Positions 32,392-34,054 of a stretch of 45,011 bases of DNA are shown in pieces. The stretch comes from Selaginella moellendorffii. Lineage: Eukaryota > Plantae > Lycopodiophyta. A program made the position numbers and the translations under genes. Below the pieces are notes generated by a model. It was not told the origin of the DNA, searched no databases, and saw only the letters and a program-made list of their open reading frames with translations. Numbering within the stretch: position 1 is the stretch's first letter; every line of letters begins with the position of its first letter. The stretch covers positions 1 to 45,011 of the forward strand of contig NW_003314474.1 of NCBI RefSeq assembly GCF_000143415.4, in the 5' to 3' direction.

Positions 32392-33935
32392 TTATTGCTG
32401 CTGATGGCCTGGAAAAAAGAAAAAGAAAAATAAAAGAGTCACGACACAAACAAACAATGAATCAGGCGGTGAATTCCAAATAGTTACCCTTGCGCCGTTT
32501 CTTCTTCTCGGGCCTCGTAAAAATATCCTCCACGCGCTCTACAATCTTTCGCTTTTTACTGCTCGCCTTCGGCTTCTTCCGGAGATCCTCCGCTACGAAA
32601 TCGCCCTGGAGACAGTCAAACCGATGCGGAAATGAGGGATTTGCGAGAGGAATGGGGAGGAGTTTCACGTACGGGAAGGTGAACTGATTTCTCGTGGTTA
32701 TCTCTGACGTGCCTGTAAGCAAAGGACTTTCCGCACTCTGGGTTGGAACATGGATACGGTCTGAATTTCAGGTGGGCAACCTTGATATGCTTTCGAAGGT
32801 TATTTTCCTGCGAGACACGTGACGAAAGATGAGCAGGCAAACAATGTGGTCATAAAACAAAAAGACCTGTAGATAGGTGAGCGGGCAGTCCGGATAGGGA
32901 CATTTTATACGCTCCCGATTCAAGAGTCCCGCTTTGTCATGAGTCGCATAGTGCCTCTTGATTTTCGACCGCATGCACTGCTTGCCACACACTTCGCAGA
33001 ACACGTACTTGTGAGCGTTCCTTGTGTGCTCGGCCAAGTCCGAAGGGTGATCAAAACGCTCGTTGCAACCCGGCTCGGAACAGACTATATCAACGTAGAT
33101 TTCTCCTGCTGCAGCAAAGAACACATGGTTAGACCGAACCAAACATATACAGGTACCTCATACTGAGAGCATATCAAGTCTAGAAAAATCGGAGAGGTCA
33201 CCCATCCCAAAACCCTGGATTGCCTCTCACCTCCTATCCGGGACTTCTTGAGGCAGTCACCCGCCTCAATACTACTCTGGAGTAGCTTTTCCACTTCGGA
33301 GTTCCATCGAGATCCGGTGTTGACGTCGAAGCTCACCTAAGCATTACATAAACAAGCCTCACCATGGCATGTCTCCTCATGATACCGAAGCTGTGATGGA
33401 TACCGGAAAGCTTTGCCACATTTCTCCTCCTTGCAAGCGTGCTCCTTTGCTTCCTCCAAGCCTTTGTCTCGGTGGCGCTGGAGCGTTCCTTTCTTTTCGT
33501 GAAGCTTCGTGTGTCGCTTTAAGTCGTGTAAAATCCTGGTGGTGAAAATGCATCCCGGCCGCGAGCAGGCATGGACCTTTCCATCGTGTTTGTCATTTAT
33601 GTGACGCTTGAGGTGATTCTCCCACTTGTATTTGGCGCCGCAAGAATCGACAGGGCAGCAAAATTTCCTCTGCGTGAAAGGATCTCGATCAGTCGGAGGA
33701 GAGAGAGATAGAATTCTACCTCGTTCGAGTGACAGAGGAGGTGCTGCCTGAGCAAGGAAGGCTTCCCCAGCTTCTTTCCACACTCACGGCACTCGTATTT
33801 CTTCTCTTCTTGATCGCTGCTGCTCGCGCTGGCGCTGCCTGTCTCGACATCCTCGCTCTCATACCTGGTGCTCTCCCAATCCTCGCTCCCATAGCTGCTA
33901 TCGGATTGATCAGAATCGCTGGAGCTGGTGTCCAT
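32392..33935 (-). CDS. TFIIIA: Transcription factor IIIA (C2H2 zinc-finger array, 8 fingers readable)
   Basis: Spliced fingers include CSEPGC, CEVCGK..IKRH, CGKSFAYRHVRDNHEK and a C-terminal GDFV motif, as in plant TFIIIA. Introns 33670-33719, 33109-33362 and 32808-32866, plus a likely final intron 32409-32487 (alternatively the stop is at 32462). Confidence 0.9.
33239..33336 (-). ncRNA. 5S rRNA mimic (P5SM-like cis-regulatory RNA) in the TFIIIA intron
   Basis: Minus strand CACCGGATCTCGATGGAACTCCGAAGTG...AGAGTAGTATTGAGGCGGGTGACTGCCTCAAGAAGTCC aligns to plant 5S rRNA CACCGGATCCCATCAGAACTCCGCAGTT...AGAGTAGTACTAGGATGGGTGACCTCCTGGGAAGTCC, with helices preserved. Confidence 0.9.
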
Positions 33936-34054
33936 CGCGCGTCGCGCAGCCTTTCTTGGAGCCCTAAAACCTAAACCTAAAATACATTGTCCCGCTCATA
34001 TTTGAAAAATTCTCTTGCCATAGCGAAGAGCAAAAGCTAGGGTTTTTAGCAGCG
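33936..34054. promoter_or_regulatory. 119-bp bidirectional promoter (TFIIIA / ASHH3-like) with telo-box-like motifs
   Basis: Divergent ATGs at 33935 and 34055. CCCTAAAACCTAAACCTAAA (33962-33981) and TAGGGTTT (34038-34045). Confidence 0.55.

What the first reader, a model, noticed from the sequence alone, without database searches (positions are those of the whole stretch)
33239..33336. Structured 5S-rRNA mimic inside the TFIIIA gene, in a different intron from the angiosperm P5SM
Seen: one TFIIIA intron is 254 nt, against ~50-80 nt for its neighbours, and contains a 5S-like sequence whose structure is kept by compensatory changes. The elements are helix II (AGCTT/AAGCT), helix III (CAC-CGGA / TCCG-AA-GTG with the 2-nt bulge), a 12-nt loop C ending GAAC, loop E (AGUA/GAA), and a rewritten 9-bp helix IV TTGAGGCGG-GTGA-CTGCCTCAA closed by the GUGA tetraloop. 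Helix I and the 5S ends are absent, so it is not a 5S gene. Established: angiosperm TFIIIA carries a 5S-mimic cassette exon (P5SM) that binds ribosomal protein L5 and controls NMD-coupled splicing. In Arabidopsis that cassette follows the finger ending ...HSLE. Here the equivalent intron (after HSNE, 33670-33719) is a plain 50-mer and the mimic sits three fingers later, after ...HEETCH. Inference: a feedback switch linking free L5/5S to TFIIIA output that arose separately or represents an older state, with a mimic much closer to real 5S. I recall a moss element in a non-homologous intron, so this may be the non-seed-plant type rather than wholly new.
Basis: partly seen in the sequence, partly recalled or inferred. 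Interest (0 to 1): 0.88.

Follow-up and report, generated by a model that had tools for sequence, protein, structure and literature searches.

The report
Relocated 5S rRNA mimic in spikemoss TFIIIA
The spikemoss Selaginella moellendorffii carries the folded 5S-rRNA look-alike that land plants use to tune production of the 5S gene activator TFIIIA, but in a different, equally ancient intron of the gene, so this feedback device seems to have been lost from its usual place and re-installed elsewhere.

Summary
The window is a S. moellendorffii scaffold. On its minus strand lies TFIIIA (CDS 33935-32392). Its 254-nt intron (33362-33109) holds a sense-strand 5S-like RNA at about 33336-33237. Helices II, III, V and IV, loop C, loop E and the GUGA tetraloop are present; helix I is absent. 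Rfam's 5S model gives only 21 bits. A model built from the TFIIIA-intron elements of moss, liverworts and ferns, without Selaginella, finds it at 37 bits (E 9e-8), once in 45 kb.

In two liverworts, a moss, two ferns and date palm the element lies in the intron after the finger ending H-S-x-E. In Selaginella that intron is a bare 50-mer, and the mimic lies in the conserved phase-1 intron three fingers later.

Evidence for function is indirect. The two haplotypes differ at 9 intron sites, none in the mimic (p=0.007). Helix IV changes keep 9/9 pairs. An in-frame TAG precedes the mimic. RNA contigs splice every other intron but retain this one, while other datasets hold only the spliced form.

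L5 binding is untested. The 2009 primary papers were not readable, so prior description is possible. The scan saw the same element on the other haplotype (s1-351337).

The parts
32392..33935 (-). TFIIIA coding region (six exons, 344 aa, eight C2H2 fingers; lacks the first finger of fern and seed-plant TFIIIA)
   Evidence: Spliced translation. Identical to 'transcription factor IIIA [Selaginella moellendorffii]' ACI25365.1 / XP_024523610.1 except at alternative junctions. Introns 1, 3 and 4 confirmed by RNA-seq joints; intron 5 by a loose end at 32487.
33109..33362 (-). 254-nt intron between the fingers equivalent to angiosperm ZF5 and ZF6 (phase 1, directly after the last His of ...HEETCH); it hosts the mimic
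   Evidence: An intron at the same position and phase occurs in all seven other loci (130-483 nt), none with a 5S hit. The intron is retained in otherwise fully spliced RNA contigs of runs X13 and X2.
33232..33341 (-). 5S rRNA mimic (Rfam alignment span); folded core 33336-33237
   Evidence: RF00001 21 bits. 5S-type fold with 28/28 standard pairs. No difference between the two haplotypes over 105 nt, against 9 in the other 149 nt of the intron, Fisher p=0.0074.
33282..33336 (-). Helix II (33336-33329 with 33288-33282) enclosing helix III and loop C (33320-33293), the L5-binding arm of real 5S rRNA
   Evidence: CACCGGAUCUCGAUGGAACUCCGAAGUG is almost the 5S consensus, with the bulged AA kept.
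33237..33281 (-). Helix V, loop E, helix IV (9-bp hairpin 33269-33248) and the GUGA loop
   Evidence: Leave-one-out model R2: 37.3 bits, E 9.3e-8. Covariation across seven TFIIIA-intron elements: 85.9% of cells paired against 78.2% in shuffles, six pairs with changes on both sides.
33337..33339 (-). In-frame TAG reached when exon 2 is read on into the intron; it ends a 182-aa, four-finger product
   Evidence: The same stop is present on the other haplotype, where RefSeq's model XP_024540073.1 (182 aa...ETCHGEACLYTS*) is exactly this read-through.
33226..33231 (-). Candidate alternative donor GAG|GUGAGA directly after the mimic
   Evidence: Sequence. Raw-read depth steps down near here in X29 and X30 (mimic about 6-8, distal intron about 1.6-4). 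No joint reached the three-read listing threshold, so its use is not shown.
33192..33208 (-). Second, decayed 5S helix IV/loop D scrap (GGGAUGGGUGACCUCUCC) followed by a U5 run
   Evidence: Weak hits of R1 and R2 (9-10 bits) in both haplotypes. It shares the 15 nt GAUGGGUGACCUCUC with the Ceratopteris element and 11 nt (GGGUGACCUCU) with the Adiantum element.
33670..33719 (-). The usual home of the plant 5S mimic (phase-0 intron after ...HSNE); here only 50 nt with no 5S-like sequence
   Evidence: (10 spliced reads in X30).
33106..33111 (-). Tandem CAGCAG acceptor of the 254-nt intron; both forms exist (…CHAGEIY / …CHGEIY)
   Evidence: XP_024523610.1 against ACI25365.1.

Best explanation

Shown:
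- A 5S-derived RNA lies in sense orientation 26 nt downstream of the exon-2 donor. It keeps the helix II/III-loop C arm and the helix V-loop E-helix IV arm.
- Reading into it meets a TAG at once.
- Mature transcripts exist both with the 254 nt removed (the productive, full TFIIIA form) and with it kept (the 182-aa stop form).

Inferred by analogy with Arabidopsis P5SM:
- Free ribosomal protein L5 binds the helix III/loop C arm.
- This favours removal of the whole intron from the upstream donor, so that TFIIIA, and hence 5S rRNA, rises when L5 is in excess.
- Without L5 the intron is kept, or the donor just after the mimic is used, giving a stop-containing mRNA open to nonsense-mediated decay.

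Origin, also inferred: the Selaginella lineage lost the ancestral element from the ZF2|ZF3 intron, which shrank to 50 nt. It gained or moved a 5S copy of about 200 nt into the ZF5|ZF6 intron. That copy was then trimmed (no helix I) and reshaped (perfect helix IV).
For: - Identity and fold.
- Position: both introns are orthologous in position and phase in eight loci, and the element is in the ZF2|ZF3 intron everywhere except Selaginella.
- Every land plant sampled keeps a 5S-like element somewhere in TFIIIA. This argues that the element is needed and that the Selaginella copy replaces the lost one.
- Constraint within the species: 0 of 105 mimic sites differ between haplotypes, against 9 of 149 in the rest of the intron, p=0.0074. 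A third allele in run X13 has six changes, all outside the mimic.
- Structure-preserving change: compared with the 5S-like scrap next door, helix IV has 8 changes in 18 positions yet 9/9 pairs, P about 4e-4 by simulation. There is also covariation across species.
- Transcripts: contigs of X13 and X2 splice the other four introns but keep this one. Runs from at least five studies hold all intron words, while X14 and X17 hold about half of the gene's words and none of the intron's, and X32 also lacks the intron words. The 2008 cDNA ACI25365.1 and XP_024523610.1 are spliced; XP_024540073.1 is the read-through form.
- The L5-triggered mechanism of the known P5SM is described in PMC3378873, PMC3355732 and PMC6164485.
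Against: - No L5 binding or splicing data exist for this element.
- No other lycophyte sequence could be obtained, so conservation rests on two or three alleles of one species.
- No splice joint across this intron reached the listing threshold in the raw reads. Only about 12% of each run was read, at depth 2-12.
- Retention could simply reflect slow removal of an unusually long, structured intron in a genome whose introns are about 50-80 nt.
- Folding energy is not unusual (z -1.3 to -1.4).
- The helix IV argument assumes that the neighbouring scrap resembles the ancestral sequence.
Confidence: 0.62

Rival explanations
1. A neutral relic. A 5S-bearing mobile element (a Cassandra-type solo LTR) or a stray 5S copy landed in this intron. 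Intron retention is a side effect of its length and structure, and nothing is regulated.
For: - Notes of this scan report abundant 194-bp 5S-carrying solo LTRs in this genome. TRIM elements make up 1.19% of the S. moellendorffii genome (PMC4717578).
- The size fits. A 5-nt repeat, TGAGG, lies 196 nt apart. Removing one copy and what lies between leaves a typical 53-nt intron.
- A U5 run follows the second 5S scrap.
- Free-energy z-scores are ordinary.
Against: - No TG...CA ends with a matching target-site duplication were found, and 5-nt repeats at such spacings are expected by chance.
- The mimic has no haplotype differences while the rest of the intron has nine.
- The stems were repaired rather than eroded.
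- The usual element is missing from its own intron, although all other plants sampled keep one.
- A mobile-element origin would not exclude later use by the gene.
Confidence: 0.2
2. A functional mimic whose ligand is TFIIIA protein itself, giving direct autoregulation, rather than L5.
For: The loop E/helix IV-V arm, which TFIIIA fingers contact in real 5S rRNA (established knowledge from Xenopus), is the best conserved part across plant TFIIIA introns. Ferns keep only this arm by the Rfam alignment.
Against: - Helix I and loop A, also part of the TFIIIA site on 5S RNA, are missing.
- The L5 arm (helix III, the bulged AA, loop C) is kept almost unchanged.
- In Arabidopsis the reported effector is L5.
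Confidence: 0.1
3. A structural switch. A 12-bp stem between the normal donor region (33360-33349) and 33339-33328 hides the donor and competes with mimic helix II. Protein binding to the 5S fold frees the donor.
For: - The stem appears in the minimum-energy fold of the whole intron and of the 47-nt piece in both haplotypes.
- The three haplotype differences in the first 26 nt of the intron all fall in its apical part.
Against: The stem has four or five G-U pairs, only -11.7 kcal/mol, and a z-score of -0.9 to -1.1. 27-28 of 200 shuffles fold as well. There is no cross-species support.
Confidence: 0.05

Closest known systems
P5SM, the plant 5S rRNA mimic, also called the exonized 5S rRNA cassette exon of TFIIIA (Hammond, Wachter & Breaker 2009; Fu et al. 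2009; described in PMC3378873, PMC3355732, PMC6164485)
   Same: - Same gene and same strand.
- Same two 5S-like arms (helix III/loop C and loop E/helix IV).
- A premature stop when the element stays in the mRNA.
- Both a productive and a stop-containing isoform are present.
- My model of the non-seed-plant elements also finds the Phoenix P5SM (23.8 bits), so they form one sequence family.
   Different: - The intron differs: ZF5|ZF6 (phase 1) instead of ZF2|ZF3 (phase 0).
- It is not a cassette exon. It starts 26 nt after the normal donor, and the form seen is whole-intron retention.
- The truncated product has four fingers instead of two.
- It is more 5S-like than the angiosperm element: 21-26 bits on Rfam 5S, against no hit for Phoenix.
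5S-like elements in the ZF2|ZF3 intron of bryophyte and fern TFIIIA (Riccia, Calypogeia, Physcomitrium, Adiantum, Ceratopteris)
   Same: The same loop E/helix IV arm. Alignment A2 has 81% mean column identity and compensatory pairs.
   Different: - They lie in a different intron.
- The liverwort and moss copies keep helix I and pass Rfam's 5S threshold (40-88 bits).
- By the Rfam alignment the fern copies have lost the helix III/loop C arm, whereas Selaginella keeps it.
Genuine 5S rRNA gene (Rfam RF00001)
   Same: Helices II-V, loop C, loop E and the GUGA loop D.
   Different: There is no helix I and no 5S ends. The score is below the family threshold. The element is embedded in a Pol II intron, and helix IV is rewritten to a perfect 9-bp stem.
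Cassandra-type TRIM retrotransposon LTRs that carry a 5S-derived segment (Kalendar et al. 2008; PMC4717578)
   Same: A 5S-derived insert of about 200 nt in non-coding DNA. Such LTRs are reported as abundant in this genome by other notes of this scan.
   Different: No LTR termini or target-site duplication are recognisable. There is no copy in the window to compare with. The mimic shows constraint that a dead LTR would not.

Membership tests
P5SM / exonized 5S element of plant TFIIIA | Lies in the TFIIIA pre-mRNA, in sense orientation | tested here: met
   The gene is identified as S. moellendorffii TFIIIA. The mimic is on the coding strand inside intron 2.
P5SM / exonized 5S element of plant TFIIIA | Folds like 5S rRNA, with a helix III/loop C arm and a loop E/helix IV arm | tested here: met
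   Rfam alignment. 28/28 standard pairs in the 5S-type fold. Leave-one-out model 37.3 bits, E 9e-8.
P5SM / exonized 5S element of plant TFIIIA | Sits between the second and third fingers (angiosperm numbering) as a cassette exon with an intron on each side | tested here: not met
   That intron is 50 nt and empty. The mimic is in the ZF5|ZF6 intron, 26 nt from the donor. The six other species checked have it in the ZF2|ZF3 intron.
P5SM / exonized 5S element of plant TFIIIA | Keeping the element in the mRNA brings in a premature stop codon | tested here: met
   TAG at 33339-33337 in frame. The same stop is present on the other haplotype in RefSeq XP_024540073.1.
P5SM / exonized 5S element of plant TFIIIA | Two splice forms co-exist in RNA | tested here: met
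   Retained form: contigs of X13 and X2, otherwise fully spliced, and runs of at least five studies hold all intron words. Spliced form: cDNA ACI25365.1 and XP_024523610.1, and runs X14 and X17 hold the gene but no intron words. The exact minor joints were not resolved.
P5SM / exonized 5S element of plant TFIIIA | Binds ribosomal protein L5, which shifts splicing to the productive form; the other form is degraded by NMD | not testable with these tools
   Needs binding assays, reporters and NMD inhibition.
P5SM / exonized 5S element of plant TFIIIA | Conserved in related species with compensatory changes | tested here: inconclusive
   No other lycophyte TFIIIA locus could be fetched. Within the species, 0/105 against 9/149 haplotype differences. 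Across land-plant elements in the other intron, covariation is present.
5S rRNA gene (RF00001) | Reaches Rfam's gathering score and has helix I | tested here: not met
   21 and 26.5 bits against a threshold of 38. Model positions 5-12 and the 3' strand of helix I are deleted.
Cassandra-type solo LTR | TG...CA termini flanked by a target-site duplication of about 5 bp | tested here: not met
   No repeat pair encloses a TG...CA segment of 150-234 nt. The TGAGG pair (196 nt apart) encloses CTTG...AGTA.
Cassandra-type solo LTR | Sequence similarity of the whole insert to dispersed genomic copies | not testable with these tools
   There is no copy in the window or in the fetched loci, and no tool here reads the rest of this genome.

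The most novel reading that the evidence does not exclude
The 5S-mimic feedback on TFIIIA was invented twice, or re-installed. After the ancestral element in the ZF2|ZF3 intron was lost, the Selaginella lineage captured a fresh 5S copy, possibly delivered by a 5S-bearing retroelement, in the ZF5|ZF6 intron. It now runs the same L5-sensing loop through intron retention or an alternative donor rather than a cassette exon. This would be convergent re-evolution of an RNA mimic within one gene, and it has not been pointed out in the literature.
Probability: 0.3. Interest if true: 0.72.

Novelty: new variant of a known kind. Interest (0 to 1): 0.5.

Why it matters
[quoted passage not shown] A lineage in which the element has left its usual intron, sits in another orthologous intron and is not a cassette exon offers two things:

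1. A natural experiment on what the mechanism really needs: the position, the flanking splice sites, or only a 5S-like protein-binding fold near a donor.
2. Evidence that selection keeps some 5S mimic in TFIIIA even when the original one is lost.

It also hints that such mimics are renewed from 5S DNA. The liverwort copies are nearly intact 5S sequences.

The practical use is modest. The element is a compact (about 100 nt), more 5S-like variant for the splicing-cassette tools already built from P5SM.

Tried and rejected
1. Rfam at gathering thresholds over the whole window gave nothing. The 5S hit appears only in an E-value search of the region.
2. A second Rfam scan of the distal intron, looking for a second 5S copy, gave nothing. 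Only my own models give a weak hit on the scrap.
3. Minimum-energy folding did not separate the mimic, the whole intron or a donor-masking hairpin from shuffles. The 'structural switch' idea is therefore kept only as a minor rival.
4. The search for other lycophyte TFIIIA genes failed. I tried a HMMER search of representatives with exon 2, word-indexed searches with the full protein, with the 182-aa read-through form and with a seven-species profile, and one Logan candidate that turned out to be an angiosperm.
5. The primary papers are not held: Hammond 2009 (PMC2680232), Fu 2009 (PMC2675980), Barbazuk 2010 (PMC3070908) and Wang 2016 (PMC4904678). No held paper combines TFIIIA with Selaginella, lycophyte or spikemoss in a relevant way. 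I therefore cannot say whether the Selaginella position was already published.
6. The test for LTR ends and a target-site duplication was negative.
7. Simple motif clustering to find P5SM in ferns and palm was too strict. It was replaced by covariance models.
9. A protein sequence was typed once into a Pfam scan. All later calls used references.
Full report
WHAT IS THERE

The window is a 45,011-nt scaffold of Selaginella moellendorffii. The protein it encodes is listed as 'transcription factor IIIA [Selaginella moellendorffii]' (ACI25365.1, a 2008 direct submission; RefSeq XP_024523610.1 on a contig of exactly this length).

The gene is on the minus strand:
- ATG at 33935 and stop ending at 32392
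- exons 33935-33720, 33669-33363, 33108-32867, 32807-32673 and 32605-32488, with the last exon starting at 32408
- introns of 50, 254, 59, 67 and 79 nt

Public RNA-seq reads confirm the 50-, 59- and 67-nt introns by joints and the last one by a loose end. The product has eight C2H2 fingers. Like the bryophyte proteins, it lacks the first finger of fern and seed-plant TFIIIA.

THE ELEMENT

The 254-nt intron (33362-33109) contains, in sense orientation, a sequence that Rfam's 5S model aligns from end to end with helix I deleted. It scores 21 bits (E 0.057) and 26.5 bits on the other haplotype. Both values are below the family threshold of 38, and nothing in the window passes any Rfam threshold.

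Written as a 5S-type fold, it has 28 pairs, all of them standard:
- helix II, 33336-33329 with 33288-33282
- helix III with the bulged AA, plus a 12-nt loop C, 33320-33293
- helix V, loop E and a perfect 9-bp helix IV closed by GUGA, 33281-33237

To avoid circularity, I built a covariance model of the loop E/helix IV arm from the TFIIIA-intron elements of one moss, two liverworts and two ferns only. It finds the Selaginella arm at 37.3 bits, E 9.3e-8, as the only real hit in the window. It also finds the date-palm P5SM. Folding-energy z-scores are ordinary, and I do not count that against it.

WHERE IT SITS COMPARED WITH OTHER PLANTS

I fetched TFIIIA loci of these species:
- Riccia sorocarpa and Calypogeia fissa (liverworts)
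- Physcomitrium patens (moss)
- Ceratopteris richardii and Adiantum capillus-veneris (ferns)
- Phoenix dactylifera
- the second S. moellendorffii haplotype

Exact spliced mapping shows two introns with identical position and phase in all of them:
- a phase-0 intron three codons after the last His of the finger ending H-S-x-E (ZF2|ZF3 in angiosperm numbering)
- a phase-1 intron directly after the last His of the finger three further on (ZF5|ZF6)

The 5S-like element lies in the first of these introns in every species except Selaginella:

| Species | Score of the 5S-like element |
|---|---|
| Riccia | 62 bits (Rfam 5S) |
| Calypogeia | two tandem copies, 86 and 88 bits (Rfam 5S) |
| Physcomitrium | 40.5 bits (Rfam 5S) |
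| Adiantum | 20.7 bits (Rfam 5S) |
| Ceratopteris | 17.9 bits (Rfam 5S) |
| Phoenix | 23.8 bits (own model R2; no Rfam 5S hit) |

This agrees with the literature statement that the angiosperm element follows the first two fingers (PMC6164485; PMC3355732). None of these species has a 5S-like hit in the ZF5|ZF6 intron.

Selaginella is the reverse. Its ZF2|ZF3 intron is a 50-mer with nothing in it, and the mimic is in the ZF5|ZF6 intron. Bryophytes, ferns and a seed plant agree with one another, so the Selaginella position is derived.

SIGNS THAT IT IS USED

1. The two assembled haplotypes differ at 49 aligned columns over 1.8 kb, 29 of them base substitutions. Nine of the differences lie in this intron: three in its first 26 nt, six in its last 123 nt and none in the 105-nt mimic (one-sided Fisher p = 0.0074). 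A third allele, seen in run X13, has six changes, again all outside the mimic.
2. Just downstream lies a decayed second 5S fragment (GGGAUGGGUGACCUCUCC plus U5, 33208-33192). It shares 15 nt (GAUGGGUGACCUCUC) with the Ceratopteris element and 11 nt (GGGUGACCUCU) with the Adiantum element. Taking it as a proxy for the starting sequence, the mimic's helix IV has 8 changes in 18 positions and went from 7/9 to 9/9 pairs. Random changes do that in about 4 of 10,000 trials. This rests on the proxy assumption.
3. Across seven TFIIIA-intron elements, the arm keeps 85.9% of cells paired (78.2% in shuffles; 0 of 500 shuffles reach it). Six pairs change on both sides.
4. Reading from exon 2 into the intron meets TAG at 33339-33337 in both haplotypes, giving a 182-aa four-finger product. 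Three or more exon junctions lie downstream, the usual setting for nonsense-mediated decay (inference).
5. RNA evidence:
   - Assembled transcripts of runs X13 and X2 have all other introns removed but run unbroken through these 254 nt.
   - Runs from at least five studies hold all sampled words of the intron. X14 and X17 hold about half of the gene's words and none or almost none of the intron's, and X32 also lacks the intron's words.
   - NCBI's own RNA-supported models give the spliced form on one haplotype and the read-through form on the other.

LIMITS OF THE RNA EVIDENCE

Only the one read-laying run sampled about 12% of each raw run. Depth over the gene is 2-12. No joint across this intron reached the three-read threshold. 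Depth falls stepwise, from about 9-10 in exon 2 to 6-8 over the mimic and 1.6-4 in the distal intron. This fits part of the transcripts using the GAG|GUGAGA donor at 33231, right after the mimic, but does not show it.

A cassette exon spliced from the normal donor is not possible, because the would-be upstream intron is 26 nt. The 23-nt micro-exon proposed in a sibling note (s1-420361) has no read support here.

MECHANISM

I commit to the P5SM model transplanted to a new site, with about 0.6 confidence. Free L5 binds the almost unchanged helix III/loop C arm and favours removal of the whole intron from the 33362 donor, raising TFIIIA and hence 5S rRNA. Without L5 the mimic stays in the mRNA and the TAG ends translation.

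Rivals:
- A neutral insertion, about 0.2. It is made more plausible by reports in this scan of abundant 194-bp 5S-bearing solo LTRs in this genome and by the size arithmetic (53-nt intron + 196 nt + 5-nt repeat). However, no LTR ends or clean duplication are present, and the constraint data argue against neutrality. A retroelement origin and later co-option are compatible.
- TFIIIA itself as the ligand, about 0.1.
- A donor-masking hairpin switch, about 0.05 (z -0.9).

NOVELTY

The kind is known: P5SM, the exonized 5S element. What differs is the host intron, the lack of cassette-exon architecture, the four-finger truncated product and the greater likeness to 5S. I could not read the 2009 primary papers or the 2010 commentary.

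The 2008 Selaginella TFIIIA cDNA suggests that Fu et al. examined this gene. From memory, their abstract says the element exists in all representative land plants. The presence of a 5S element in Selaginella TFIIIA is therefore probably already known. Whether its displaced position was noted I cannot tell. No held paper mentions it.

Another agent of this scan reached the same reading on the other haplotype (s1-351337). That is the same locus and not independent support. I rate the finding a new variant of a known kind, with interest 0.5.

Noticed in passing
L002:3951-4069 and L002:4103-4221 (Calypogeia fissa); L001:3708-3831 (Riccia sorocarpa): Liverwort TFIIIA introns hold almost intact 5S sequences in sense orientation, including helix I. 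Calypogeia has two tandem copies at 86 and 88 bits, and Riccia has one at 62 bits. This is far above the moss (40.5), fern (18-21) and angiosperm (no Rfam hit) elements. They could be renewed from 5S rDNA, or even be transcribed by Pol III.
   Followed up: partly
window 33186-33217 (-): A second, decayed 5S fragment (CCAGGGUUUUGGGAUGGGUGACCUCUCCGA) is followed by UUUUU, 20 nt downstream of the mimic, in both haplotypes. It shares 15 nt with the Ceratopteris element and 11 nt with the Adiantum element. It may be a remnant of a tandem or longer 5S-bearing insert.
   Followed up: partly
window 32606-32672 (-): The 67-nt intron 4 is spliced in the RNA-seq reads and contigs. It is retained in both the 2008 cDNA protein (ACI25365.1) and RefSeq XP_024523610.1, which therefore end ...VHLPVRETPPHSSRKSLISASV instead of continuing to ...KRRKGHQQQ. 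The public protein models probably give the wrong C-terminus, one that lacks the basic tail.
   Followed up: partly
window 33106-33111 (-): The 254-nt intron has a tandem CAGCAG acceptor. The cDNA uses the second AG (…CHGEIY) and RefSeq the first (…CHAGEIY).
   Followed up: no
L006:4272-4347 (Adiantum), L005:7642-7737 (Ceratopteris): By the Rfam alignment the fern TFIIIA elements keep only the loop E/helix IV arm and have lost the helix III/loop C arm, which is the L5 arm of real 5S. Selaginella and date palm keep both arms. This is odd if L5 is the universal ligand.
   Followed up: no
window 33955-33990: Telomere-like repeats (AGGTTTAGGTTTTAGGG on the gene strand, that is AAACC/CCCTAAAA 'telo-box'-like motifs) lie just upstream of the TFIIIA start codon. 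They sit in a short region shared with a divergent gene that starts near 34046 on the plus strand.
   Followed up: no
window 32398 (against L003:4537-4548): The other haplotype has a 12-nt insertion in the last coding exon just before the stop codon, so the two alleles may end differently.
   Followed up: no
P0009 (Ginkgo), P0019, P0103, P0273: Several database 'proteins' of seed-plant TFIIIA are read straight through the P5SM exon. They show peptides such as ...PGWVTS... or ...SGWETTWEAP..., which are translations of GGGUGAC-type 5S helix IV. They are annotation artefacts that mark the position of the cassette exon before the third finger.
   Followed up: no
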